64,000 bases of DNA from IMG/VR virus record IMGVR_UViG_3300036781_000418, positions 278,592 to 342,591 of that record; one strand, 5' to 3'. Each line of letters opens with the position of its first letter. Positions within the stretch are counted from its first letter, which is position 1. The notes beneath the pieces are model-generated. The model ran no database searches. It was not told where the DNA came from and saw only the letters and a list, made by a program, of their open reading frames with translations. The position numbers and the translations under genes were made by a program. Below are positions 12,487-32,072 of the stretch, one piece after another.

Positions 12487-12583
12487 ATAGGACTCACGTT
12501 GAATCTAAGGTTCGGGCCAATGTGCAAACATTCGGCCCGAGTTTGATTTGCGCGACTGTATAACACATAGTAGGATAGAACAA

Positions 12584-13039
12584 ATGGAACAACTAGACGA
12601 ACTCCAATATGAAAAGAAGCCACGAGCTGGCCTAATCCCGTACATCATGGGTCAGGATGGGCGGTACCGTTACCTGATGATGATCGCCTCTAACTCGAAG
12701 TTCGGTGGCCCAAGACCAATGATCTCCAAGGGCAAGATTGAGGAGGGTGAGACCCCCTACATCGCCGCGGTTCGCGAGGCCGAGGAGGAACTTGGGTTGA
12801 TCGCGTACAACATGAAGGGAACCCCCGCCCTCCTCACCGAGGAACAGGTCACCCTTCGATCCGGAACTTACTTCTTTACGGTGTACGCCGTGGAGATCTA
12901 CGATCGCTCCCTCTTCAACATGTGGTGTAGCGAGACGGAGTATACGGAGTGGTACACGCTCGACGAATTCCAACAACATGGACGACGCGATCACATCAAG
13001 TTCATCCAACAACTCGAACAACAGCTTAGACAAACCTAA
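12584..13039 (+). CDS. NUDIX hydrolase
   Basis: GKIEEGETPYIAAVREAEEELG Nudix box. Confidence 0.85.
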   Translation: MEQLDELQYEKKPRAGLIPYIMGQDGRYRYLMMIASNSKFGGPRPMISKGKIEEGETPYIAAVREAEEELGLIAYNMKGTPALLTEEQVTLRSGTYFFTVYAVEIYDRSLFNMWCSETEYTEWYTLDEFQQHGRRDHIKFIQQLEQQLRQT

Positions 13040-13052
13040 ATGAGATAGCATA

Positions 13053-13718
13053 ATGGCAAAGGTACTCTTCCTTGACAAATCAGGTCAACCACTTGACTGG
13101 GGCACGTGGCGTGACGCCGTGGAGCACTACGCTAAGGACCACGTGCTGTGGGAACTTGGCGACAAGAACCGTGAGTCGATCACGTTCCGTGGCGGGTTCA
13201 ACTGCAACGGCGATCAGTCAAAGATCTCGGTCGCACCGATCATCGCCTTGAACGGTGAGGCCACGGGTCGTAAGCGCTACAAGATCCCAACCCTGAACAA
13301 CCGGTACCTGTTTGCCCGTGACCGTTGGACCTGCGCGTACTGCGGCTCGACCAACCCCAACGAGTCAAAGCTGTCGTGCGACCACGTCGTGCCGCGTTCC
13401 CGTGGTGGCAAGGACATCTGGGAAAACGTCGTCACCTCCTGCGGTCCATGCAACAACTTCAAGGACAACTGGCTGTTGAGTGAAATTGGGATGGAGCTCA
13501 GGTACGTGCCGTACGTCCCGACACAGGCCGACATCCTGTTCATGGAGTCTCAGGGCATTCTCCCGAGTCAGGCCGAGTACCTGCTGCCGTTCTGCTCCGA
13601 GCGTGCTCGGCTCTCGTTCCAGGGCGTCGCGAACCAAGGTGGTCCCGCGTTGAACCACCTTGAAGAGGCGGCTCGGGCGGCTGGACCTCGTCGTTCGAAG
13701 GCACCGACCCGTAAGTAA
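13053..13718 (+). CDS. HNH endonuclease
   Basis: RDRWTCAYCG...DHVVPRSRGG...WENVVTSCGPCNNFK. Confidence 0.9.
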   Translation: MAKVLFLDKSGQPLDWGTWRDAVEHYAKDHVLWELGDKNRESITFRGGFNCNGDQSKISVAPIIALNGEATGRKRYKIPTLNNRYLFARDRWTCAYCGSTNPNESKLSCDHVVPRSRGGKDIWENVVTSCGPCNNFKDNWLLSEIGMELRYVPYVPTQADILFMESQGILPSQAEYLLPFCSERARLSFQGVANQGGPALNHLEEAARAAGPRRSKAPTRK

Positions 13719-13802
13719 CCTGGATGGTTCCTCCGTAATGGGACCATCTAGACAACTACGGGTCGTCCAACAACGTACAATGGTCGTAACAACTGGTGCA
13801 GC

Positions 13803-14243
13803 ATGATCGATTCAAACAAGGTTCTCGGTGCGGCGATGCTTATCTCGCTCGCCCTTCTCACGCTCGTTGACATTACGGGAACGGGTGGTGTGGTGCGGTT
13901 GGCGGTCAGCTTAGTGGTGTTCCCACTGCTCTCGCTGTTCATCACCTGGCTGTTTGGAATTGTGATGGAGGCGGTCGGGCTTGGACACAAGCTAATGCAG
14001 CCTCCGGTCATGCACGACCTTGAGCCTGAGGTCATCATCGGCGAGTTGGTCGGTCAGTCGACGACGGTGGCTGGTTCGCTCAACGGCGATCCGTTTCCGG
14101 AGTGGGTCGACATTCTCCAAGCGAAGACGGGTGATACCCTTCGGTACTACTACCACTCCGTGGAGATTCCAAACTACATGTACCCAGTTGGGTACATCGT
14201 CATGACCTTCGGCAAGGCGCACCTCGTCTACGCTGGCACCTGA
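13803..14243 (+). CDS. Hypothetical membrane protein
   Basis: Two N-terminal TM segments; TACAAT box upstream. Confidence 0.55.
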   Translation: MIDSNKVLGAAMLISLALLTLVDITGTGGVVRLAVSLVVFPLLSLFITWLFGIVMEAVGLGHKLMQPPVMHDLEPEVIIGELVGQSTTVAGSLNGDPFPEWVDILQAKTGDTLRYYYHSVEIPNYMYPVGYIVMTFGKAHLVYAGT

Positions 14244-14364
14244 TCCTGGGTATCGTGTGCATGGCTACGCCGCCTGCATACAATAGGCAGACCGGTTAAG
14301 CACCGGTTGACTACCCAAACCGCGCCCTCACGGGTCCCTTCTTCGTTTGATTCCAAAGTAGTTT

Positions 14365-14805
14365 ATGTCCACACTCATCACGACCATCAAAGTTGACCAA
14401 CTGGCCGCCCGCAAGGCCCGCGAGCAAGGTAAGACCGCGCTCCTCACCACGTTGATCGGCGAAGCTGACACGAAGGCGAAGAATGAAGGGACCACCCTGC
14501 TGTCTGATGAGAAGACGCTCAAGCTCGTGACGACGTTCATCTCCAACCTACGTGACAACCTGAAGCTCATCGAGCCAAACTCGATCGCTGGCATTCAGGC
14601 GACGCAGGAGATCGAGATCCTTGAAAAGTACGTGCCCACGCAGCTCACTGAAGATGAGCTTGTGGCGAAGGTCAAGGCCATCCTTGTGGATTCGCCCGAG
14701 GTCCCTAAGATCGGCGTCCTGATGGGCGCCCTCAAACAACAACTTACCCCAGGCACCTACGACGGAAAGCTCTTGGCCGACGTCGTAAAGCGCCTGATCA
14801 GTTAA
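14365..14805 (+). CDS. GatB/YqeY domain protein
   Basis: IKVDQLAARKAR...LLTTLIGE...EIEILEKYVPTQLTEDEL...IGVLMGALK. Confidence 0.85.
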   Translation: MSTLITTIKVDQLAARKAREQGKTALLTTLIGEADTKAKNEGTTLLSDEKTLKLVTTFISNLRDNLKLIEPNSIAGIQATQEIEILEKYVPTQLTEDELVAKVKAILVDSPEVPKIGVLMGALKQQLTPGTYDGKLLADVVKRLIS

Positions 14806-14817
14806 CCCTTTTTGGTT

Positions 14818-15057
14818 CGTGGTTGAACCGTTGATATTGCTTATCATCTAAAGCACTGTGAACCCCTGTTCGTCGGATCCAGCCTCAAAGCCGACTATCT
14901 GCAAGTAAGAAGACTTGAACGTGTCTCAGGTAGCTGGGATGTGATTTAGCTGCATATCACTAAAAAGTAGCAGGCCTAACGGGATGCCTATTACTCCGTT
15001 GTTCGGTCGTACCATCGTGTGACCGTCCCTTGCGATGTCGTTTTTCGCTCAACCACG
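14818..15057 (+). ncRNA. Candidate Y-RNA-like structured RNA upstream of Ro60
   Basis: Ends pair: CGTGGTTGA/TCAACCACG and TGATATTGC/GCGATGTCG. Several internal hairpins; U-rich 3' flank; no convincing ORF. Confidence 0.6.
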
Positions 15058-15099
15058 TTTCCTTTTCTCTCGTTGAAACCCTTTGTTTTGGAGAACCAG

Positions 15100-16731
15100 A
15101 TGTCTGCATCAACTTACACCGACTTTGCCCAGTCACAGAACCCAGCCAACGCCGTGACCCACCAGACGCAGCCGATCCCAGGCCGCGAAGGTGAGATGGC
15201 CAAGAACAACGCGGGTGGCTTCACCTTCGCGCTTGACCAGTGGGGCGTGTTCGACCGCTTCCTGTTGATCGGTTCGGAAACCCCAGGCTACTACGTCGGT
15301 ACCAAGGAGCAGACCGCTGAAAGCTTCAAGAGCACCATCGCGTGCGTCAAGGCCGACGGCCTCCGTGCGATCAACCGCCTGAAGGAAATCTCGCTCGCTG
15401 GTCGCGCACCGAAGAACGACCCAGCCGTCGTGGCGCTCGCCTTGGCGGCCATCTACGGTGACGCCACGGTCAAGGCCGCCGCGTACGAAGCCCTGCCACA
15501 GGTCGCACGTACCGGCACCTGGCTGTTCCAGTTCGTCTCCATCGTCGACTCGCTCGGCAAGTGGAACGCGGCGACCAAGCGTGGTGTGGCCAACTGGTAC
15601 ACCAGCAAGAACCTCGACAAGCTGGCCATCCAGCTCCTGAAGTACCAGTCCCGCAACAACTGGTCGCACCGCGACGTGCTGCGTCTGGCCCACATCAAGC
15701 CGACGGAACAGAACACCACGTTGTTCAAGTACGTGGTCAAGGGTGCCGACGGTATGGTGCAAGGCGACTTGCTGCCGAACCTCGTCATCGACTTCGAACG
15801 CCTGAAGCGCGCCACCACCAAGGCTGAGGTCTTGGCCGTCGTCAACGGCAACAAGGACGTCACGTGGGAAATGGTGCCGACGGTGTGGCACAAGGACAAG
15901 GACGTCATGCTGGCGTTGCTGCCGAACATGGGCCTGACCGCGATCATCCGCAAGCTTGGTATCCTCACCATGCACGGCGTCATCACGCAAGGCGACGGTC
16001 TGAAGCACGTCACCGACGTGCTGACCAATCCTGAGCAACTGACGCGCTCGCGCATTCACCCGCTCTCGGTGCTCCAGGCCTTCAAGCAGTACAGCCAAGG
16101 TCGCGGTGAAAAGGGCTCCAATACCTGGTCACCGGTCAACGACGTGAAGAACGCCCTTGACATGGCCTTCTACAGCGCGTTCCAGAACGTGCCAGGTACT
16201 GGTGGCTCCGTGTTCCTCGGTGTCGACTGCTCGGGCTCGATGTTCGGTGCTCCTGTCAACGGCTCGCCAAACTTGGTGGCCGCTGAAGTCGCCGCGGTGA
16301 CCGCCCTGGCGATCGCCAAGCAGCAGAAGAACTACTTCATCGGTGGCTTCAACACCACGATGGCGCCGATCGGCATCGACCCGGATATGCGCCTTGACAA
16401 GGCGTTGGAGGTGATTCGTCGCTTCCCATGGGGCGGCACGAACTGCGCCCTGCCGATGATCTACGCCGCGCAGAAGAAGATGGAGGTCGACACGTTCGTG
16501 ACCATCACGGACAATGAGACCTACGCTGGTTCGATCCAACCGTCTCAGGCCCTGCGCGACTACCGCAAGCAGTTCAAGAAGCCGAAGGCCTCGAACATCG
16601 TCATCGGTACGTCCGTCAGCAAGTTCACGATCGCGGATCCGAAGGACCCGTACCAACTGGACATCGCCGGTTTCGACTCGGCCGCTCCGGTTCTGATCGC
16701 TGAGTTCATGAAGGCTTCAGCCGCGACCTGA
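15100..16731 (+). CDS. rsr: Ro60/Rsr TROVE-domain RNA-binding protein with vWA domain
   Basis: NNAGGFTF, RFLLIGSE, KYQSRNNWSHRDVLRLAH, RIHP, DCSGSM (MIDAS), GGTNCALPM, TDNET, GFDS. Confidence 0.95.
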   Translation: MSASTYTDFAQSQNPANAVTHQTQPIPGREGEMAKNNAGGFTFALDQWGVFDRFLLIGSETPGYYVGTKEQTAESFKSTIACVKADGLRAINRLKEISLAGRAPKNDPAVVALALAAIYGDATVKAAAYEALPQVARTGTWLFQFVSIVDSLGKWNAATKRGVANWYTSKNLDKLAIQLLKYQSRNNWSHRDVLRLAHIKPTEQNTTLFKYVVKGADGMVQGDLLPNLVIDFERLKRATTKAEVLAVVNGNKDVTWEMVPTVWHKDKDVMLALLPNMGLTAIIRKLGILTMHGVITQGDGLKHVTDVLTNPEQLTRSRIHPLSVLQAFKQYSQGRGEKGSNTWSPVNDVKNALDMAFYSAFQNVPGTGGSVFLGVDCSGSMFGAPVNGSPNLVAAEVAAVTALAIAKQQKNYFIGGFNTTMAPIGIDPDMRLDKALEVIRRFPWGGTNCALPMIYAAQKKMEVDTFVTITDNETYAGSIQPSQALRDYRKQFKKPKASNIVIGTSVSKFTIADPKDPYQLDIAGFDSAAPVLIAEFMKASAAT

Positions 16732-16769
16732 TCGTCGTACATCCCCAACGCGCACGAGCGCGTATAATG

Positions 16770-16796
16770 AAAGGACGCTAACCAAGCGTCCTTTTT
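16770..16796 (+). terminator. Intrinsic terminator after Ro60
   Basis: AAAGGACGCT-AACCA-AGCGTCCTTT followed by TT. Confidence 0.6.
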
Positions 16797-16952: not shown

Positions 16953-17183
16953 ATGACGACGACCTTAGAGCTCCACAAGATCAAACGATCGATGCACCAC
17001 GACGTCGTTCGGTCCTTCCAGGCAATGCTCAGCGAGTGCGACGTCAAGGCCGTTGACAAGCTTGACCCCGTACTGATGAAGTCCGTCGAAGGTTGGTACA
17101 AGCAGTGGAACCGTATGACGGGCGACGACGCGCAACCTTCATGGATCCGACCATGTTCTCGAACCTCATCAACGACTCTATGA
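16953..17183 (+). CDS. Hypothetical protein
   Basis: 76-aa ORF in operon orientation. Confidence 0.45.
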   Translation: MTTTLELHKIKRSMHHDVVRSFQAMLSECDVKAVDKLDPVLMKSVEGWYKQWNRMTGDDAQPSWIRPCSRTSSTTL

Positions 17184-17899
17184 TCAAAGACCACCTCACC
17201 CACACTGAGAAGCTGAAGCTCTCGGCCAGGTACTGGCTGCTCGGGGCCGCTACGTTCGACAAGCGGTACTACAAGTGCCTTGACGCGTTGGAGATCGCCA
17301 TCGGCCACCATGACGGCGTCCGCAACGACGGCACCGACGAGATCGCCCACATGATCGGCGTCTTCCAACTGCTGCGGACGATGCACAACCACCTGCTTGA
17401 TCCGGTGAGCGCGTACATCGAGGCGCTCCTCCATGACTGCATCGAGGATCCGAACCAGCTGACGAAGAAGTTCATCGCCCCGTCCGAGATTCAAGCGCAG
17501 TTTGGCAGCCAGATCCACGACGAGCTGCTGATCATGTCGAAGGAGATCCTCGGCCAGAAGAACCCTCAGTTTCTGCTGAGCAACGTCTTCCTCAACGTGA
17601 ACACGAGCGTGGTGAAACCAGGTGACCGTGACAACAACGTCGCGTCGATGTACGGCACGTTCAAGCCCGCTCGCCTGGCACGGTACATCAAGGAGACCAA
17701 GGAGGAGTACTTCGCCGGTCTCAAGGTTGCGCGTCGCAAGTTCCCTGAGCAGGAGCCCATCTATGAAAACATCAAGCTCTCCCTCACCCACAAGCTCCAG
17801 CTTATCGAGCACCTCGCCAAGAAAGACGAAGAGTCAAGTGCAGCTGGACGGGGAGAGGTTCCTGAAGCTAGCGGCACTAATTCACGCGGGCCTGGGTGA
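17141..17899 (+). CDS. HD-domain RelA/SpoT-type hydrolase (small alarmone hydrolase/Mesh1-like)
   Basis: HDGVRNDG..EIAH, ALLHDCIED, VKPGDRDNN motifs. Confidence 0.8.
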   Translation: MDPTMFSNLINDSMIKDHLTHTEKLKLSARYWLLGAATFDKRYYKCLDALEIAIGHHDGVRNDGTDEIAHMIGVFQLLRTMHNHLLDPVSAYIEALLHDCIEDPNQLTKKFIAPSEIQAQFGSQIHDELLIMSKEILGQKNPQFLLSNVFLNVNTSVVKPGDRDNNVASMYGTFKPARLARYIKETKEEYFAGLKVARRKFPEQEPIYENIKLSLTHKLQLIEHLAKKDEESSAAGRGEVPEASGTNSRGPG

Positions 17900-18010
17900 A
17901 CTGGCGGTCGTAAAGTACTCGATTTCCAAACGTGGTATCGAGCGTAAGAAGATCCTGTCGATCCGTGAACTACGTCGCGTGATCGACGATGAAGCAAGAA
18001 AGGCTGAACT

Positions 18011-18556
18011 ATGAAGGCGTTGGTTAAGCTCATCGCGGGCGTACGCGACGACGGTGTCATCGGCAACGCGGACCATTCGCTGCCGTTCAAGAGCTCACGT
18101 GACATGAAGCGCTTCAAGGAGCTGACTTCAGGGCACCATGTCATCATGGGTCGCGTGACGTTCGACACGCTCAAGCGGCCAGGTGGACTGCCTAACCGCT
18201 ACAACTACGTGGTGTCACGCACGAACTCGTGGTCGGCGATGGCCAGGCTGTGCGGTTCGTTGGATCAAGCGATTCAAGACTGCCACGACAGCAATGAGGT
18301 CATCGGCTATCCCAAGGACATCTGGATCATCGGTGGTGCGTCGATCTACAAGGAGGCGATTGAGCGCACCTTGGTGGATGAGTACTACCTGACCATCGTC
18401 CACCAACCAGGCGAAGTGCATCCAGCACAGGTGCACTTTCCGGTGTCGTTGGACGTCTTCATGCTGAGTGAAGGCGCTGAGATCGTGCATGAGCCAGCCA
18501 CGGAGACTGACCCTGCACTGACCTTCCTGACCGTCAAGCAACCACGGTCTGCTTGA
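18011..18556 (+). CDS. frd: Dihydrofolate reductase
   Basis: GVIG..LP...DMKRFKELT..VIMGRVTF..LPNR..IIGGASIY. Confidence 0.92.
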   Translation: MKALVKLIAGVRDDGVIGNADHSLPFKSSRDMKRFKELTSGHHVIMGRVTFDTLKRPGGLPNRYNYVVSRTNSWSAMARLCGSLDQAIQDCHDSNEVIGYPKDIWIIGGASIYKEAIERTLVDEYYLTIVHQPGEVHPAQVHFPVSLDVFMLSEGAEIVHEPATETDPALTFLTVKQPRSA

Positions 18557-21327: not shown

Positions 21328-23298
21328 ATGATGTCTCTGAAAAAACTGGCTGAACAACGCAAGAACCAACTTGGGCAATCCGAGCCGATGACGCTCGAAG
21401 CCTACCTCGAACTGTGCAAGAGCGACCGCATGGCGTTCGCCACGGCGGCCGAGCGGTTCATGGACGCCGTTGGCGAGCCACGCATCGTTGATACTTCCGA
21501 AGACCAGCGCCTCTCGCGCATTCACTCCAACCAGAAGATCCGCGTCTACGACGCCTTCTCCGACTTCTACGGCATGGAAGCCGCGGTCGAACGCGTCGTC
21601 GCTTACTTCCGCCACGCGGCTCAAGGCCTCGAGGAATCGAAGCAGATCCTGTACTTGCTGGGTCCCGTCGGCGGCGGCAAGTCGAGCCTCTCCGAGCGCA
21701 TCAAGGCGCTGATGGAGAAGCACGCTATGTACGTGCTGTACGACGAGAACGAGACCAACCCCGAGCTGAAGCTCTCGCCGGTCTTCGAATCGCCGCTGGC
21801 CCTCTTCAACCCCAACAACCCCGACGACGCCGCCGTCCTGAACGAGTACGGCATTCCGCTGTCCTACGCAGGCCGCTCGCCGCTCTCCGGCTGGGCCCAA
21901 CAGAAGCTCGACGAGTTCAAGGCCAACGACCTCGACTTCAGCGCCTTCAAGGTGGTCAAGCTGTACCCCAACAAGGACCGTCAGATCGGCATCATGAAGG
22001 TCGAGCCGGGCGACGAGAACAACCAAGACGTCTCGGTGCTGATCGGCAAGACTGACCTGCGCAAGCTCGAGAAGTTCCCGCAGAACCACCCGTACGCCTA
22101 CTCCTACAGCGGCGGCCTGAACCGCACGACGCAAGGCCTGATGGAGTTCGCCGAAATGTTCAAGGCGAACATCAAGACCCTCAACCCCTTGCTGATGGCC
22201 ACGCAGGACCGCTCCTACAAGGGCACTGAAGCGATTCCCGCCCTCCCGTATGGTGGCGTGATCATGGCCCACTCCAACGAGTCCGAGTGGGAAACCTTCC
22301 GCAACAACAAGTCGAACGAGGCTTTCCTCGATCGCGTGTTCATCGTCAACGTGCCGTACTGCCTGCGCTACGACGAAGAGGAACGCATCTACCAGAAGAT
22401 GCTGAACTCCTCGGTGCTGCGTGATGTGCGCGTCGCGCCTGGCACGCTGAAGATGCTGTCGCAGTGGTCGGTGCTGACGCGCCTGAAGAGCCCTGAAAAC
22501 TCGACCATCGCGGCCAAGCTGGCGGTCTACAACGGCGAGAACGTCAAGGACAAGATGCCCAACGTCAAGTCCCACGAGGAGTACGTCGAGGCCGCTGGTC
22601 CGCGCGAAGGCATGGCCGGCATGTCCACCCGCTTCGCCTTCAAGGTGTTGAGCTCGGTGATCAACTTCCGCCCTGAAGAACTCCAGGCCAACCCCGTTGA
22701 CCTGATGTTCGTGCTGACGGAAGCCTTGAAGAAGGAAGGTCTGCCGCCTGAAACCCAACAGGCCTACGAGAACTTCATCAAGGAGATCCTGCAACCGAAG
22801 TACTTCGAGACCCTCGAGAAGGAACTCCGTGCGGCCTACCTCGACTCGTTCAGCGCCTTCGGCCAGAACCTCTTCGAGCGCTACATCCGCTTCGCCGAAG
22901 CGTGGATCGCCGACGAGCAGTGCAAGGACCCCGAGACCCACCAACTGCTGGACCGTCGGAAGCTCAACGACGAACTGGAAGCGATCGAGAAGGCCAGCGG
23001 CATCACGAACGCGAAGGACTTCCGCCAGGACATCGTGAACTACGTCCTGCGCTACAAGTCGCGCAGCGAAGGCAAGTCGCCGGCGTGGACCGAGTACGAG
23101 AAGATCCGCCAAGTCCTCGAGAAGCGCATGTTCAGCGCCACTGAGAACATCATGCCCGTGATCTCGTTCGGCCCCAAGCACGACCGCGACCTCGAGGACA
23201 AGCACAACGCGTTCATCCAGCGCATGCTGGACAAGGGCTACTCCGAGCTGCAGATCAAGCAGCTGGTGGCCTGGTGGTCGAACAACAAGCGCACCTAA
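21328..23298 (+). CDS. prkA: PrkA/YeaG AAA+ serine kinase
   Basis: HAAQGLEESKQILYLLGPVGGGKSSLSE, EPGDENNQDVS, GLMEFAEMFKA, NEAFLDR, VPYCLR. Confidence 0.95.
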   Translation: MMSLKKLAEQRKNQLGQSEPMTLEAYLELCKSDRMAFATAAERFMDAVGEPRIVDTSEDQRLSRIHSNQKIRVYDAFSDFYGMEAAVERVVAYFRHAAQGLEESKQILYLLGPVGGGKSSLSERIKALMEKHAMYVLYDENETNPELKLSPVFESPLALFNPNNPDDAAVLNEYGIPLSYAGRSPLSGWAQQKLDEFKANDLDFSAFKVVKLYPNKDRQIGIMKVEPGDENNQDVSVLIGKTDLRKLEKFPQNHPYAYSYSGGLNRTTQGLMEFAEMFKANIKTLNPLLMATQDRSYKGTEAIPALPYGGVIMAHSNESEWETFRNNKSNEAFLDRVFIVNVPYCLRYDEEERIYQKMLNSSVLRDVRVAPGTLKMLSQWSVLTRLKSPENSTIAAKLAVYNGENVKDKMPNVKSHEEYVEAAGPREGMAGMSTRFAFKVLSSVINFRPEELQANPVDLMFVLTEALKKEGLPPETQQAYENFIKEILQPKYFETLEKELRAAYLDSFSAFGQNLFERYIRFAEAWIADEQCKDPETHQLLDRRKLNDELEAIEKASGITNAKDFRQDIVNYVLRYKSRSEGKSPAWTEYEKIRQVLEKRMFSATENIMPVISFGPKHDRDLEDKHNAFIQRMLDKGYSELQIKQLVAWWSNNKRT

Positions 23299-23382
23299 CC
23301 GTGCGTCGGTTGTAAGTAAGGTAAGGAGGGTGGCCGTGGTGGGCTACCCTCCATTACCCCTCCCCTTGAAAGGCGACCCATC

Positions 23383-24744
23383 ATGACAACGGACATTATG
23401 CACAAGTCAGACATGATCATCGTCGACCGCCGCCGCACGGCGCGCGGAAAGTCGCTCCCCAACCGAGAGCGACTGCTCGACCGGATCCGCGATGCAATTC
23501 GCTCGGCGGATCCAGAAAACATCGGCACCGGCGGTGTCAAGGCTTCCGGTGCGCCGACTGGCGGCGCTGGTGGTGCCAACAACCCCGTCACCGTGGCCCG
23601 TGAGGCCTTGGCCGAACCAACCTTCCACTACGCCCGCCAATCAGGCAAGCACACCATCGTGCTGATTGGCAACAAGGAGTGGAACCGTGGTGACGACTTC
23701 CCGCTTGAAGGTGAAAGCGACGAAGAAGGTGGTGGCGGTGAAGGCGGCTTCGGTGAAGACGAAGAAGACGACTTCATCGTGAACATCTCGGCCGAGGAGT
23801 TCTACAAGGTCTTCTTCGACGACTGTGAGCTCCCCAACATCCAAGAGTCCACGATGCGCGTGGTGCCGGATGAAGCACCCTCGCACGCTGGCTTCCAGCG
23901 CAGCGGCAACCCCGCCCAGCTGTCGGTCATCCGCTCCTACAAGAACTCCATGGGTCGCCGCAACGCGCTGACCAAGCCCGCTCGTGAGGAGCTGGCGGAA
24001 CTGGAAGCCGAGTTCGAACTTCGTTCGCAGGGCAAGCACCCACAAGGTGAGTACCTCGACGAGGCGGAGAACATCTCGATCATGGCGACCTTGGCCGAAC
24101 GGATCGAGGAACTGCGCCGCAAGATCGGCGCCACGCCGTTCTTCGAGGAGCTGGACCTTCGCTTCGTTCACCGTGAACGCCAGCAAGTCAAGAAGGCCGA
24201 GGCCGCGTTCTTCATGCTGATGGACGTGTCCGGTTCGATGGACGAGGAGCGCAAGCGGATCGCCCGCAAGATGTTCACGTTGCAGTACGTGTTCATCAAG
24301 CGCACGTACCCCGACACGGACATCGTGTTCATCTCCCACACGAACACGCCGCTTGAGGTGACCGAGACGGACTTCTTCACGTCCACCCGCTCCGGTGGTA
24401 CGTCCATCTCGCCAGCCTACACGATGGCGCATGACCTCATCAACAAGCGGTACGATCCGAACCTCACCAACATCTACCTGTCGCACGCCAGCGACAGCGA
24501 CAACTGGGACACGGACAACCTGCTGGTGGAGAAGGAGTTGGTGGGTAGTGGCCTGCTGCCGAAGCTGCGCCACATGGTCTACTTTCACTGCGGCTTTGGC
24601 TCCAACCAGTACGGTGCACGGGCCTTCATGGTGCTGCTCAAGGGCATCGCCAACAAGTCCAACAACAAGCTCACCGTGGCTTCGATCGAAGATGAAGGTG
24701 CCGTGTTCACGGTGTTCAAGGCGGTCTACCGCAAGAAGGGTTAA
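23383..24744 (+). CDS. yeaH: YeaH/YhbH (DUF444) vWA protein
   Basis: IVDRR..GKSLPNRER, GNKEW.RGD, LMDVSGSMDE, SGGTSIS, HASDSDNW. Confidence 0.93.
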   Translation: MTTDIMHKSDMIIVDRRRTARGKSLPNRERLLDRIRDAIRSADPENIGTGGVKASGAPTGGAGGANNPVTVAREALAEPTFHYARQSGKHTIVLIGNKEWNRGDDFPLEGESDEEGGGGEGGFGEDEEDDFIVNISAEEFYKVFFDDCELPNIQESTMRVVPDEAPSHAGFQRSGNPAQLSVIRSYKNSMGRRNALTKPAREELAELEAEFELRSQGKHPQGEYLDEAENISIMATLAERIEELRRKIGATPFFEELDLRFVHRERQQVKKAEAAFFMLMDVSGSMDEERKRIARKMFTLQYVFIKRTYPDTDIVFISHTNTPLEVTETDFFTSTRSGGTSISPAYTMAHDLINKRYDPNLTNIYLSHASDSDNWDTDNLLVEKELVGSGLLPKLRHMVYFHCGFGSNQYGARAFMVLLKGIANKSNNKLTVASIEDEGAVFTVFKAVYRKKG

Positions 24745-24746
24745 CC

Positions 24747-26222
24747 ATGAAACCAATCGACTCCAAAGAGGACTTCTCCGCTCCTCGCATCGTCGAGATC
24801 TGGAATGAAGTGGCGATCATCGCGAAGGATGAGCTGGGCATGGAGGTTGGCAAGAACCTCTACATCAACCAGTTTGAGATCGTGACGGCCGAACAGCTGC
24901 TGGACGCGTACGCTTCGATTGGACTGCCCGTCAACTACCACCACTGGTCGTTCGGCAAGAAGTTCATCGAAAACGAGCGCTCGTACGCTCAAGGCAAGAT
25001 GGGGCTGGCGCTGGAGATGGTGATCAACTCCAACCCCTGCATCAACTACCTGTCCGAGCAGAACACCATGGTCGAGCAGGCCATGGTGATCGCCCACGCC
25101 GCGATCGGTCACAACTTCTGCTTCACCAACAACGTCTACTTCAAGGAGTGGACGTCGGCCTCGAACATCGTGGACTACATGGTCTTTGCTCGTGACTTCA
25201 TCGGTCGCTGTGAGGACCAGTACGGGCGCGACGAGGTGGAGAAGGTGATCGACGCGTGCCACTCCATCGGCACCCACTCGATCGACAAGTACCACCGTCG
25301 CAACACGACCAAGGAGAACGAGGAAGCGCGCCTCGAGAAGATCCTCAAGGAAGACGACCGTCGCCAGCGTGAGCTGGACATCGTGATGCGCAAGACGTCG
25401 CTGAACTACATGAAGGACGATCCGGTCGCTGACACCGCCGAGGTGGACCAAGAGGAGAACATCCTCTACTTCATCATGAAGAAGGCGCCCAACACGCCGC
25501 AGTGGAAGCGCGAGATCATGCGCATCTGCTACAAGGTGGAGTCCTACTTCCAGCATCAAGGCCTGACCAAGGTATTGAACGAGGGCATCGCCACCTTCGT
25601 CCACTACTACATCATGGAGCGGCTCGAGGCCAAGGGCTGCATCACGTCGGACGCGTACATCAAGTTCCTTGATCTGCACGCCTCGGTGATTCGTCAGCCA
25701 CACTACAAGCAACGTGGCGGCACACGTTTCAACCCCTACAAGCTCGGCTTCGAGATCCTCATGGACCTCAAGCGCATCTGCACCGAGCCGACGGAGGAAG
25801 ACAAGCGCTGGTTCCCCAACATCATCGGCCGCCCATGGTGCGAGGTGGTCAAGGAGGCCGTGACGGAGTACCGTGACGACTCCTTCATCCAGCAGTTCAT
25901 GTCACCGAAGCTGATGCGCGACTTCGGGCTGTTCTCCATCGAGATCGACTACGAAGAGTCGGACGACTACGCCAAGGTGCTGGAGATCCAAGACGATCAA
26001 GGGTACTCCAACCTTCGCACGCAGCTCGCCCAAAGCTACGAGCGCATCAACTACGTGCCGGAAATTGCGGTGGTCAAGGCCGACCTCGGCGGCGACCGCA
26101 CCCTGCACCTGCGCTACAAGCAGTTCAACGAGCGCACAGTGGACGTGGACGACGCACGTGACGTGATTCGCCACCTGAAGTTCCTCTGGGGCTACCCAGT
26201 CTCGTTTGAAATCCCTGATTGA
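24747..26222 (+). CDS. ycgB: SpoVR/YcgB family protein
   Basis: GLPVNYHHWSFGK, EMVINSNPCINYL, AHAAIGHN, TKVLNEG, NPYKLGF. Confidence 0.93.
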   Translation: MKPIDSKEDFSAPRIVEIWNEVAIIAKDELGMEVGKNLYINQFEIVTAEQLLDAYASIGLPVNYHHWSFGKKFIENERSYAQGKMGLALEMVINSNPCINYLSEQNTMVEQAMVIAHAAIGHNFCFTNNVYFKEWTSASNIVDYMVFARDFIGRCEDQYGRDEVEKVIDACHSIGTHSIDKYHRRNTTKENEEARLEKILKEDDRRQRELDIVMRKTSLNYMKDDPVADTAEVDQEENILYFIMKKAPNTPQWKREIMRICYKVESYFQHQGLTKVLNEGIATFVHYYIMERLEAKGCITSDAYIKFLDLHASVIRQPHYKQRGGTRFNPYKLGFEILMDLKRICTEPTEEDKRWFPNIIGRPWCEVVKEAVTEYRDDSFIQQFMSPKLMRDFGLFSIEIDYEESDDYAKVLEIQDDQGYSNLRTQLAQSYERINYVPEIAVVKADLGGDRTLHLRYKQFNERTVDVDDARDVIRHLKFLWGYPVSFEIPD

Positions 26223-31490: not shown

Positions 31491-32072
31491 ATGAAATATG
31501 GAATCCAAATTCGGTTTCACGATGGACAAATCGAATACCTGTACAGCAGCCGCTATTTGGGGTTGACGAAGGACATCACCGAGACCGCGCTCTACAACCA
31601 AGAGCAGAGCGCGATCGACGCGGTCAAGCTACTGCGCAAGGACGGGCATGAGCCAGATGATGGGGAGTTTGAAGTCATCGGCGTAGAGTACGCCGTGCAG
31701 AAGACCGTCACGGTTAAGCAGCCTCCACGGAAGACGGGCTACGCAATCATCACCTCATCGGTTGAAAAGCCCGACATTGACGTCTTCTTCAACGGTACCA
31801 AGCGACCTGGCATTCACGACAACCGACTCCACCAGTTCTTCGGAACCATTCATCGCGCCACCACGTTCGAGACTGAGGCCTTGGCTGAGGCGCGTGTTCA
31901 GGTGATCATCGCCGCCGCCGACTTCGCGTTGAACGAGGCTGGTAAACCAGCTTACGACTACGGCGGTTTCCGAAACACCGCGGAAGAACGTGAGCGCTCA
32001 CGACAAGCGTGCATCGCCTACGCCCAACGACTTCGAGACGACTTGAACGCAATCCACGTAGAAAAGCTCTAA
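31491..32072 (+). CDS. Hypothetical protein
   Basis: 193 aa, coupled to its neighbours. Confidence 0.6.
   Translation: MKYGIQIRFHDGQIEYLYSSRYLGLTKDITETALYNQEQSAIDAVKLLRKDGHEPDDGEFEVIGVEYAVQKTVTVKQPPRKTGYAIITSSVEKPDIDVFFNGTKRPGIHDNRLHQFFGTIHRATTFETEALAEARVQVIIAAADFALNEAGKPAYDYGGFRNTAEERERSRQACIAYAQRLRDDLNAIHVEKL

What the first reader, a model, noticed from the sequence alone, without database searches (positions are those of the whole stretch)
14365..16796. Phage Ro60 preceded by a ~240-nt structured RNA: candidate new, large Y-RNA class (YqeY-ncRNA-Ro60 unit)
Seen: the ~290-nt gap before Ro60 is unusual in this compact genome. Its ends form an interrupted stem: CGTGGTTGA 14818-14826 with TCAACCACG 15049-15057, and TGATATTGC 14832-14840 with GCGATGTCG 15032-15040. 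The stem encloses hairpins CAAGT/ACTTG, GTGAT/ATCAC, AGTAGCAGGC/GCCTATTACT and CGGTCGTAC/GTGTGACCG (15004-15025), and has a pyrimidine-rich 3' flank. Known: bacterial Y RNAs lie next to rsr and bind Ro through a 5'/3' stem. The 5' strand GTTGAACCG loosely resembles the GNCGAAN(0-1)G Ro-binding motif. Inference: a Y-like RNA longer than typical and without the YrlA tRNA-like T loop, so with a different effector module, next to a YqeY-domain gene.
Basis: partly seen in the sequence, partly recalled or inferred. Interest (0 to 1): 0.8.

Follow-up and report, generated by a model that had tools for sequence, protein, structure and literature searches.

The report
Large Y-like RNA before phage Ro60
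The 294-base gap in front of a jumbo phage's Ro60 gene most likely encodes an unusually long (about 240 nt) Y RNA, the small RNA partner that Ro60 proteins carry in animals, bacteria and some phages; the kind is known, but this one is twice the usual size and has its own, unrelated middle part.

Summary
All stems and hairpins are at the stated coordinates. The 294-nt gap is one of three gaps of at least 290 nt in a window whose median gap is 68 nt.

The reading as a Y-like RNA is supported by comparison, not by thermodynamics. The fold z-score is only -1.6.

About 40 related jumbo-phage Ro60 loci carry, just upstream of Ro60, RNAs built as follows: lower stem, CCG, upper stem, UUAUC, variable interior, upper-stem return, U-rich loop, lower-stem return. 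The stem sequences covary from locus to locus. A descriptor of this architecture hits the 64-kb window once, at 14818-15057, 42 nt before the Ro60 start.

Relatives usually carry two such RNAs: a 55-130 nt mini form and a 220-370 nt large form. The window has only the large form, and YqeY sits where the mini form normally lies.

YqeY is found next to Ro60 in none of about 240 other loci, so the "YqeY-ncRNA-Ro60 unit" is not conserved.

The RNA is not YrlA: it has no Rfam hit and no tRNA-like domain. Its 186-nt interior matches nothing in the relatives.

Covariance models built here miss it, but they also miss every large relative. No RNA data exist.

Verdict: a new variant of a known kind.

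The parts
14270..14285 (+). Promoter-like element (TGCATACAATAGGCAG) upstream of YqeY; probable start of the YqeY - Y RNA - Ro60 transcript
   Evidence: It matches 11 of 16 positions of the conserved TGTATAAAATAGCAAC (-10 region) that heads the noncoding region in relatives L247 and L249. The consensus scan did not call it because the -35 is weak. This is inference.
14365..14805 (+). YqeY/GatB-C-terminal-like gene (146 aa)
   Evidence: Pfam PF09424 YqeY, 4e-14. PHROG 1460 'tRNA amidotransferase', 4e-26. Not found next to Ro60 in any other locus.
14818..15057 (+). Candidate large Y-like RNA (240 nt from the first to the last paired base; true ends unknown)
   Evidence: It is the only match in the window, on either strand, to the architecture descriptor derived from relatives. 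It ends 42 nt before the Ro60 start; relatives end 37-72 nt before it and span 221-372 nt.
14818..14826 (+). Lower stem P1, 5' strand (CGUGGUUGA), pairs with 15049-15057
   Evidence: P1 is locus-specific in relatives: their own partner gives a median of 10 bp, other loci's partners a median of 4 bp.
14827..14831 (+). 5' internal loop ACCGU, holding the conserved CCG (14828-14830); presumed Ro60 contact
   Evidence: CCG is invariant at this place in alignment A5 (47 sequences) and in both RNA modules of the relatives. It corresponds to the CCG/CG of GGUCCGA and GNCGAA in PMC4201824. Ro60 binding is inferred.
14832..14840 (+). Upper stem P2, 5' strand (UGAUAUUGC), pairs with 15032-15040
   Evidence: 9 pairs, 3 of them G-U, so the helix is specific to the + strand. 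The top pair is C-G where relatives have G-C or A-U, a change on both sides.
14841..14845 (+). UUAUC motif directly after the upper stem
   Evidence: (G)UUAUC or UUACC follows P2 in the relatives and in the bacterial Ro60-adjacent RNAs. It also stands in the consensus of Rfam nematode sbRNA family RF01656. UUAUC is reported as conserved in sbRNAs and vertebrate Y RNAs (PMC4726728).
14846..15031 (+). 186-nt interior ('loop domain') with six predicted hairpins: 14872-14895, 14902-14917, 14924-14939, 14941-14960, 14967-14995, 15004-15025
   Evidence: MFE fold and direct reading. There is no sequence match to relatives, no Rfam family and no tRNA-like element. The structure is predicted only; no covariation data are available.
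15032..15040 (+). Upper stem P2, 3' strand (GCGAUGUCG)
15041..15048 (+). U-rich 3' internal loop (UUUUUCGC)
   Evidence: Relatives have CA..UUUU(G) at this place. Bacterial forms have CACCAACUUG.
15049..15057 (+). Lower stem P1, 3' strand (UCAACCACG)
15091..15096 (+). Shine-Dalgarno sequence GGAGAA of Ro60
   Evidence: Read directly. It has the same position as AGGAG in the relatives.
15100..16731 (+). Ro60 gene (543 aa; TROVE ring plus vWA domain)
   Evidence: Pfam vWA_Ro60 9e-49 and TROVE 6e-27. 2,708 homologues at E<=1e-20; the closest is 66% identical.
16773..16796 (+). Intrinsic-terminator-like hairpin (GGACGCU / AGCGUCC, then UUUUU) ending the unit
   Evidence: Read directly. The simple scan did not list it.

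Best explanation
Window 14818-15057 (+) encodes a Y RNA-like noncoding RNA, the RNA partner of the phage's own Ro60.

Proposed transcription and processing (inferred):
- It is most likely transcribed together with YqeY and Ro60 from a promoter near 14275, with termination at about 16796.
- It may then be cut out of the precursor, as happens in M. smegmatis.

Proposed structure:
- The two ends pair into a lower stem (9 bp) and an upper stem (9 bp).
- An asymmetric internal loop separates the stems. Its 5' side carries the conserved CCG and its 3' side is U-rich.
- UUAUC follows the upper stem.

Proposed function:
- This stem module is the presumed Ro60-binding platform. That is inferred from Y RNAs of animals, Deinococcus, Salmonella, Mycobacterium and Thermus phage phiLo.
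- The 186-nt, six-hairpin interior is the variable 'loop domain'. By analogy it gates the Ro60 cavity and tethers Ro60 to a partner. The partner would be a host exoribonuclease such as PNPase, or another RNA-handling protein, so that structured or damaged RNA is processed during infection.

What is shown here: the sequence architecture, its uniqueness in the window, its position, and covariation of the same architecture in relatives.

What is inferred: transcription, processing, Ro60 binding and the partner.
For: 1. The stems are present as described. Their joint duplex energy is in the top 1.5% of same-geometry pairs in the window and is weaker on the - strand.
2. Relatives at 47-66% Ro60 identity almost all have a 430-620 nt ORF-free stretch before Ro60. 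It holds one or two modules with the architecture P1, CCG, P2, UUAUC ... P2', U-run, P1'.
3. P1 differs completely between loci yet pairs within each locus. Helices of 9 bp or more occur in 18 of 26 loci with their own partner, against 14 of 622 with another locus's partner. For P2, a score of 7 or more occurs in 12/29 own pairings against 36/794 cross pairings.
4. The descriptor hits the 128 kb of both window strands once, at this site, with a 9-bp P1. In 40 second-order Markov randomisations there were no hits at 9 bp or more.
5. Distance to the Ro60 start (42 nt) and span (240 nt) fall inside the ranges of the large module in relatives: 37-72 nt and 221-372 nt. Relatives L174, L180, L185, L198 and L016 also carry only the large module.
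6. The C before UUAUC in the window is compensated by a G on the 3' strand. The window has TTGC/GCGA where relatives have TTGG/CCGA.
7. Short forms of the same architecture from 47 Ro60 loci align with 14 of 14 pairs showing changes on both sides. Pairing is 90% against 64% in shuffles and 39-46% in slid controls.
8. The Rfam model of nematode sbRNAs (Y RNA homologues) scores 37 bits on the small module of L183. It scores 41-43 bits, above its 38-bit threshold, in bacterial Ro60 loci. This ties the architecture to bona fide Y RNAs.
9. Y RNA-like RNAs upstream of phage Ro60 genes are described, and for phiLo they bind the phage Ro60 and host PNPase in vitro (PMC4201824, PMC12135203).
Against: - No transcript evidence: no RNA run was listed.
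- No own promoter or terminator was detected in the gap.
- The whole-gap fold z-score is only -1.6.
- Sequence searches find no similarity to the relatives' noncoding regions: blastn and nhmmer E>=0.18.
- Covariance models built from 11 and from 47 short Y-like RNAs do not recover it. The best partial hit is 9.1 bits, E=4.4, and nothing spans the full length. The same models miss every large module of the relatives, so this test is uninformative rather than negative.
- The descriptor was loosened after seeing the window: any base was allowed before TTATC, and an offset of 0-2 nt.
- The RAG that follows CCG in the GNCGAAG-type motif is UUG here.
- The interior has no relatives, so its structure is untested.
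Confidence: 0.7

Rival explanations
1. The structure is a cis-acting 5' leader of the Ro60 mRNA. An example would be a site where Ro60 binds its own message to set its translation or stability. On this view it never exists as a separate stable RNA.
For: - No promoter or terminator lies between YqeY and Ro60.
- The stem ends 42 nt before the start codon, with a good Shine-Dalgarno sequence after it.
- In relatives too there is no terminator between the large module and Ro60. A conserved hairpin (UGCUGC..GCAGCCG) sits just before the ribosome-binding site.
Against: - The same architecture occurs in 1-4 tandem copies, and far from the start codon, in other Ro60 loci.
- In M. smegmatis both Y RNAs are cut from one precursor made upstream of rsr and are bound by Rsr as separate RNAs (PMC4201824).
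- The two roles do not exclude each other.
Confidence: 0.15
2. This is a chance arrangement of stems in a spacer left by the insertion of YqeY. It would be noncoding DNA without a function of its own.
For: - The MFE z-score is -1.6, and 13 of 200 shuffles fold as well.
- About 1.5% of same-geometry segment pairs in the window pair as strongly.
- There is no sequence-level homology, and the covariance models fail.
Against: - The combined motif-plus-stem descriptor is unique in 128 kb and is expected fewer than 0.03 times at 9 bp.
- It sits exactly where relatives keep their large Y-like RNA, with matching distance and size.
- A compact genome (median gap 68 nt) rarely keeps 294 idle bases.
Confidence: 0.1
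3. It is a member of a different, already described RNA family (riboswitch, tRNA-like element, tmRNA, group I intron, YrlA).
For: None found.
Against: - There are no Rfam matches at gathering score in the whole window.
- There are none at E<=10 in 14700-15200.
- There are no tRNA or tmRNA genes.
- Rfam does hold YrlA, and it detects that family in control actinophage loci at 42 and 29 bits.
Confidence: 0.03

Closest known systems
Bacterial and phage Y RNA-like RNAs: YrlA/YrlB of Salmonella and M. smegmatis and 22 mycobacteriophages (Chen et al. 2014, PMC4201824; Rfam RF02553)
   Same: - They are encoded next to Ro60 on the same strand, upstream of it as in M. smegmatis.
- The 5' and 3' ends form the stem that carries the Ro-binding motif.
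- There are usually two RNAs per locus, one a plain long hairpin and one with a large module. The window's relatives show the same pattern: a small and a large module made from one promoter.
   Different: - This RNA is 240 nt, against 80-130 nt.
- There is no match to the YrlA model at E<=10, while control phages score 29-42 bits.
- There is no T-arm or D-arm tRNA mimic.
- Of GNCGAAN0-1G, only the CG (as CCG) and a later G are kept.
- There is only one RNA at the locus.
Yrl1 and Yrl2 of Thermus phage phiLo (PMC12135203)
   Same: - A phage-encoded Ro60 has Y RNA-like sequences in the noncoding region directly upstream.
- The layout is stem, bulge, stem.
- In that system, binding to the phage Ro60 and to host PNPase was shown in vitro. 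It is the best functional precedent.
   Different: - Those RNAs were picked by a CGAA motif, which the window lacks.
- There are two RNAs there and one here.
- I did not compare the sequences, because the phiLo locus was not fetched.
Metazoan Y RNAs and nematode stem-bulge RNAs (Rfam RF01656; PMC4726728)
   Same: - The order of elements is the same: lower stem, C/CG bulge region, upper stem, UUAUC at the start of the loop, a variable loop domain, then a bulge on the 3' strand before the lower stem returns.
- The RF01656 model scores 37-43 bits on short relatives of this RNA next to phage and bacterial Ro60 genes.
   Different: - The window RNA itself gets no RF01656 hit.
- Its loop domain is several times longer.
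- The 3' bulge is UUUUUCGC rather than CACCAACUU.
- It has no Pol III-type 3' U tail context.
The Ro60-proximal large Y-like RNA ('module 2') of related jumbo phages, defined here (for example L187 2157-2413, L174, L180, L247)
   Same: - Same position and strand, and same size range.
- Same elements: P1, CCG, P2, UUAUC, U-rich 3' loop.
- Same synteny: NUDIX, HNH, a small protein, then noncoding RNA region, then Ro60.
   Different: - The relatives share a conserved interior: GCAAGUUGAAAGACAAGC, three covarying hairpins ending in GUGUAGG, and CUGAAAUCUCCGA. The window has none of these.
- The relatives' conserved hairpin before the ribosome-binding site is also missing.

Membership tests
Y RNA (Ro60-associated noncoding RNA, broad sense) | Encoded close to the Ro60 gene (within about 4 kb) and on the same strand in prokaryotes and phages | tested here: met
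   It ends 42 nt upstream of the Ro60 start, on the + strand.
Y RNA (Ro60-associated noncoding RNA, broad sense) | The 5' and 3' ends pair into a long stem interrupted by a bulge or internal loop that carries the Ro-binding site | tested here: met
   P1 is 9 bp and P2 is 9 bp, with an asymmetric loop between them (ACCGU / UUUUUCGC). Duplex energy is -22.7 kcal/mol, in the top 1.5%. This is predicted, not probed.
Y RNA (Ro60-associated noncoding RNA, broad sense) | Conserved Ro-binding word on the 5' strand (GGUCCGA in animals, GNCGAAN0-1G in bacteria) | tested here: inconclusive
   The window has GAACCGUUG. Only the CCG and the final G agree. CCG is the invariant core in 47 aligned Ro60-adjacent RNAs. 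The bases after CCG also vary in the relatives' large module.
Y RNA (Ro60-associated noncoding RNA, broad sense) | Bound by Ro60 in vivo or in vitro | not testable with these tools
   This needs a pull-down or EMSA.
Y RNA (Ro60-associated noncoding RNA, broad sense) | Exists as a discrete stable transcript of 80-130 nt | tested here: not met
   On size: 240 nt between the outermost paired bases. On expression: untested, since no RNA run was listed.
YrlA (Rfam RF02553) | Match to the family covariance model (gathering score 69 bits) | tested here: not met
   No hit at E<=10 in 14700-15200. Control phage loci L246 and L245 score 42 and 29 bits.
YrlA (Rfam RF02553) | Internal tRNA-like module (T arm, acceptor-like stem, D arm) | tested here: not met
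   There is no tRNA or YrlA model hit at E<=10. ARAGORN finds nothing.
Metazoan-type Y RNA / nematode sbRNA stem (Rfam RF01656) | UUAUC directly after the upper stem | tested here: met
   UUAUC is at 14841-14845 and abuts P2. The motif is in the family consensus and in PMC4726728.
Metazoan-type Y RNA / nematode sbRNA stem (Rfam RF01656) | Match to the family covariance model (gathering score 38 bits) | tested here: not met
   No hit for the window. Short relatives score 37-43 bits. A 186-nt insertion in the loop would by itself cost such a model its score.
Large Ro60-proximal Y-like RNA of the related jumbo phages (defined here) | Architecture P1, CCG, P2, UUAUC ... P2', U-run, P1', ending 37-72 nt before Ro60 and spanning 221-372 nt | tested here: met
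   Single descriptor hit in the window. Distance 42 nt, span 240 nt.
Large Ro60-proximal Y-like RNA of the related jumbo phages (defined here) | Conserved interior blocks (GCAAGUUGAAAGACAAGC; hairpins ending in GUGUAGG; CUGAAAUCUCCGA) | tested here: not met
   There is no GUGUAGG-type anchor in the window RNA. nhmmer with the relatives' profile gives nothing significant.
Large Ro60-proximal Y-like RNA of the related jumbo phages (defined here) | Recognised by a covariance model of the shared stem module | tested here: inconclusive
   Models R1 and R2 do not find it. They also find none of the relatives' large modules.

The most novel reading that the evidence does not exclude
The window's RNA is the founding example of a 'giant' Y RNA whose 186-nt, six-hairpin effector domain is unrelated to two known designs: the tRNA-like module of YrlA and the conserved interior of its sister phages. 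On this reading the phage has re-tooled its Ro60 particle for a different partner or substrate. It may work together with the YqeY (GatB-tail-like, tRNA-binding-type) protein whose gene has taken the place of the small second Y RNA in the same transcription unit.
Probability: 0.2. Interest if true: 0.7.

Novelty: new variant of a known kind. Interest (0 to 1): 0.5.

Why it matters
Ro60 and its Y RNAs form a conserved RNA-surveillance particle. How the variable 'loop domain' of a Y RNA chooses the particle's partner is still open.

What this case offers:
- Phage versions are natural experiments. This clade of jumbo phages (about 340 kb) keeps a canonical stem module with animal-like features (CCG, UUAUC).
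- The interior is swapped freely. It ranges from nothing in 55-nt mini forms, to a conserved interior of roughly 170-320 nt, to the window's unique 186 nt.
- That gives a ready-made panel for asking what the interior recruits.
- It extends the known size range of Y-like RNAs well beyond 80-130 nt.

Limits: the existence of a Y-like RNA before a phage Ro60 is itself expected from earlier work. The window's copy has no expression or binding data.

Tried and rejected
1. Rfam. There is nothing at gathering score in the window or in 20 relatives, and nothing at E<=10 in the gap. So no known family fits, YrlA included.
2. blastn and nhmmer of the gap against 244 related loci and against GenBank phages. 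Only self hits and chance 26-49 nt matches came back.
3. YqeY as a conserved partner. Rejected: tblastn found it in none of the other loci.
4. Small ORFs in the relatives' gaps. They are not conserved in frame, so these regions are noncoding.
5. RNAalifold on a MAFFT alignment of the relatives' interior domain (A3). It gave no structure because the hairpin strands were misaligned. I did not pursue a hand alignment.
6. Covariance models R1 and R2. They do not reach long-loop members, the window included.
7. A by-eye match of the window's CGUUGUUCGGUCGUACC to the T-arm-like block of L170, and of GCAAGUAAGAAGAC to GCAAGUUGAAAGAC. I dropped both as unsupported by any test.
8. Public RNA runs. None was listed.
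9. A possible degenerate small module in the 121-nt leader before YqeY (ACCGGUUAAGCACCGGUUGAC). No closing stem was found, so it is left as an unexplained resemblance.
Full report
**What is there.** The window is part of a 342,591-bp IMG/VR contig, a jumbo-phage-sized genome. At the finding:
- a YqeY-domain ORF (14365-14805) is followed by a 294-nt ORF-free gap;
- then comes a 543-aa Ro60 gene (15100-16731; TROVE plus Ro60 vWA domain);
- a hairpin plus U-run at 16773-16796 closes the unit.

A crude ORF map gives a median intergenic gap of 68 nt. Only two other gaps are as long as this one.

**Is it more than chance?** Energy alone is weak:
- The whole gap folds with z = -1.6 on the + strand.
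- The interrupted terminal stem has a duplex energy of -22.7 kcal/mol. About 1.5% of same-geometry segment pairs in the window reach that value.
- The stem is weaker on the opposite strand, because three of the upper-stem pairs are G-U.

There are no Rfam families or tRNAs in the window, and nothing at E<=10 in the gap. Rfam does contain YrlA. It detects YrlA below threshold upstream of Ro60 in two control actinophages, so the negative result for the window carries information.

**Relatives.** The Ro60 protein has thousands of homologues. The nearest are 57-66% identical and come largely from contigs of 330-370 kb.
- In nearly all loci with 47% identity or more, Ro60 is preceded by 430-620 nt without conserved ORFs.
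- This region starts with a sigma-70-like promoter (TTTAC.., then TGTATAAT-like).
- The closest relatives share the window's gene order: NUDIX, HNH, a small unannotated protein, then the noncoding region, then Ro60.
- YqeY was found next to Ro60 in none of about 240 loci.
- In the window YqeY sits where the relatives carry the first of two RNA modules.

**Architecture.** The relatives' noncoding region holds two modules of one design: a lower stem P1, then CCG, an upper stem P2, (G)UUAUC, a variable interior, the P2 return, a CA..UUUU loop and the P1 return.
- The distal module is a mini form of 55-130 nt.
- The module next to Ro60 spans 221-372 nt and ends 37-72 nt before the start codon.
- P1 has a different sequence in almost every locus but always pairs. 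Each 5' strand was allowed to search its own or another locus's downstream region under the same rules. Helices of 9 bp or more were found in 18 of 26 own pairings and 14 of 622 cross pairings.
- P2 shows the same trend more weakly, because its top (UUGG/CCRA) is conserved in sequence.

A descriptor of this design matches both strands of the 64-kb window exactly once, at 14818-15057, with a 9-bp P1. Forty randomised windows gave no match of that strength. The descriptor had to be relaxed to accept the window's C before UUAUC. That C is matched by a G on the other strand, where relatives have G-C. This is the expected signature of a kept pair, but the relaxation was made after seeing the window.

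Distance to Ro60 (42 nt) and span (240 nt) are those of the large module. Several relatives also carry the large module alone.

**Link to Y RNAs.** Short versions of the same design are common beside bacterial and phage Ro60 genes.
- The descriptor gives 128 hits within 800 nt upstream on the Ro60 strand in 91 loci. Elsewhere in these loci there are 71 hits on both strands, and many of the + strand ones also look genuine.
- Forty-seven of them align without help. All 14 predicted pairs show changes on both sides. Pairing is 90% against 64% in shuffles and 39-46% in slid controls. These sequences were chosen with a pairing filter, so only the variety of pair types is independent evidence.
- The Rfam model of nematode stem-bulge RNAs, which are accepted Y RNA homologues, scores 37 bits on the mini module of L183. 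It scores 41-43 bits, above its 38-bit threshold, in bacterial Ro60 loci. Its printed consensus (..GGUCCGGAG..GGGUUAUC.. / ..CACCAACUUGACCG) shows the same elements.
- UUAUC is reported as conserved in sbRNAs and vertebrate Y RNAs (PMC4726728).
- Y RNA-like RNAs upstream of phage Ro60 are known from mycobacteriophages (PMC4201824). In Thermus phage phiLo they bind the phage Ro60 and host PNPase in vitro (PMC12135203).

**What does not fit.**
- The window RNA's 186-nt interior shares nothing detectable with the conserved interior of its relatives or with YrlA's tRNA mimic.
- Covariance models made from 11 and from 47 short members do not recover it. The same models miss every long-loop member in 14 relatives. 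This shows the limit of the models, not absence of the RNA.
- No promoter or terminator is evident inside the gap, so the RNA would be made as part of the YqeY-Ro60 transcript.
- No public RNA run was listed for the sequence.

**Mechanism proposed.** The stem module (P1, CCG loop, P2, UUAUC) docks on the outer face of the Ro60 ring. The long interior both guards the ring's cavity and tethers a partner enzyme, by analogy with the Ro60/Y RNA/PNPase machine. A cis role as an autoregulatory leader of the Ro60 mRNA is compatible with the same structure and cannot be excluded. Binding, processing and the partner are all inferred.

**Verdict.**
- The Y RNA reading is supported, with confidence of about 0.7.
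- The claims of a new class and of a YqeY unit are not supported in that form.

It is a divergent, oversized member of a Ro60-adjacent Y-like RNA family that Rfam does not yet cover in phages.

Noticed in passing
L187 1949-2476, L247 1924-2500, L008, L183 and about 35 other related loci: Related jumbo phages carry a conserved two-RNA locus before Ro60. It has its own promoter and a 5' hairpin. A mini Y-like RNA (55-130 nt) comes first, then a large one (221-372 nt). The large one has a conserved interior: GCAAGUUGAAAGACAAGC, three covarying hairpins ending in GUGUAGG, and CUGAAAUCUCCGA. No Rfam family covers either RNA.
   Followed up: partly
L139 1040-1111 and 1875-1944; L056 1159-1228; many loci in L024-L164 (for example L025 2340-2404): Bacterial Ro60 loci (MAGs labelled Verrucomicrobiota, Chloroflexota, Armatimonadota) hold 1-4 short RNAs of the form ..GGGCCGAAG..GGGUUAUC....CACCAACUUGUCCGC... 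These pass the gathering score of the Rfam nematode sbRNA family RF01656. This argues that bacterial and animal Y RNA stems are homologous. A 2015 review (PMC4726728) says the bacterial RNAs are not homologous with the vertebrate Y RNA clades. I found no paper in the held library that mentions UUAUC in bacterial Y RNAs.
   Followed up: partly
L096 170-2286, L162 45-1121, L052 195-1838 and 4216-5506, L056 4229-5463: Dense tRNA gene arrays lie directly beside Ro60 in several loci. There are also tRNA-model matches stretched over 105-140 nt (L139 1624-1747, L161 2113-2243, L100 1929-2034, L118 1936-2054). These may be tRNA-like Y RNA modules or interrupted tRNAs.
   Followed up: no
window 14244-14364: The 121-nt leader before YqeY starts with a promoter-like word shared with the relatives. 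It contains ACCGGUUAAGCACCGGUUGAC, which resembles the CCG..GGUUAUC signature, but no closing stem was found. It may be a decayed remnant of the small Y-like RNA that YqeY displaced.
   Followed up: partly
window 21328-26222: A PrkA kinase / DUF444 (YeaH-like) / SpoVR (YcgB-like) gene trio, normally a bacterial stress module, is encoded on this phage-sized contig.
   Followed up: no
window 31652-32008 and 2217-2532: These are the two other long ORF-free gaps of the window (357 and 316 nt). There is no Rfam match in either. They were not examined further.
   Followed up: no
window 12548-14243 and 17093-18556: Ro60 sits among nucleotide and RNA-handling genes. Upstream are a NUDIX hydrolase, an HNH endonuclease and a small protein weakly similar to the relatives' 190-aa protein. 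Downstream are an HD-domain phosphohydrolase and dihydrofolate reductase.
   Followed up: partly
L181 about 2450-2480 and most relatives (columns 630-655 of the trimmed alignment): A conserved hairpin UGCUGC-loop-GCAGCCG lies between the large Y-like RNA and the Ro60 ribosome-binding site in relatives. It is absent from the window. It could be a processing or regulatory site.
   Followed up: no
L245 2096-2610 (Mycobacterium phage ScoobyDoobyDoo) and L246 2102-2745 (Gordonia phage Cashline): The annotated records show 515- and 644-nt unannotated gaps before 'Ro-like RNA binding protein'. These gaps hold sub-threshold YrlA matches and, in L246, sbRNA-model and tRNA-model matches. Y RNAs are not annotated in these GenBank records.
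   Followed up: partly
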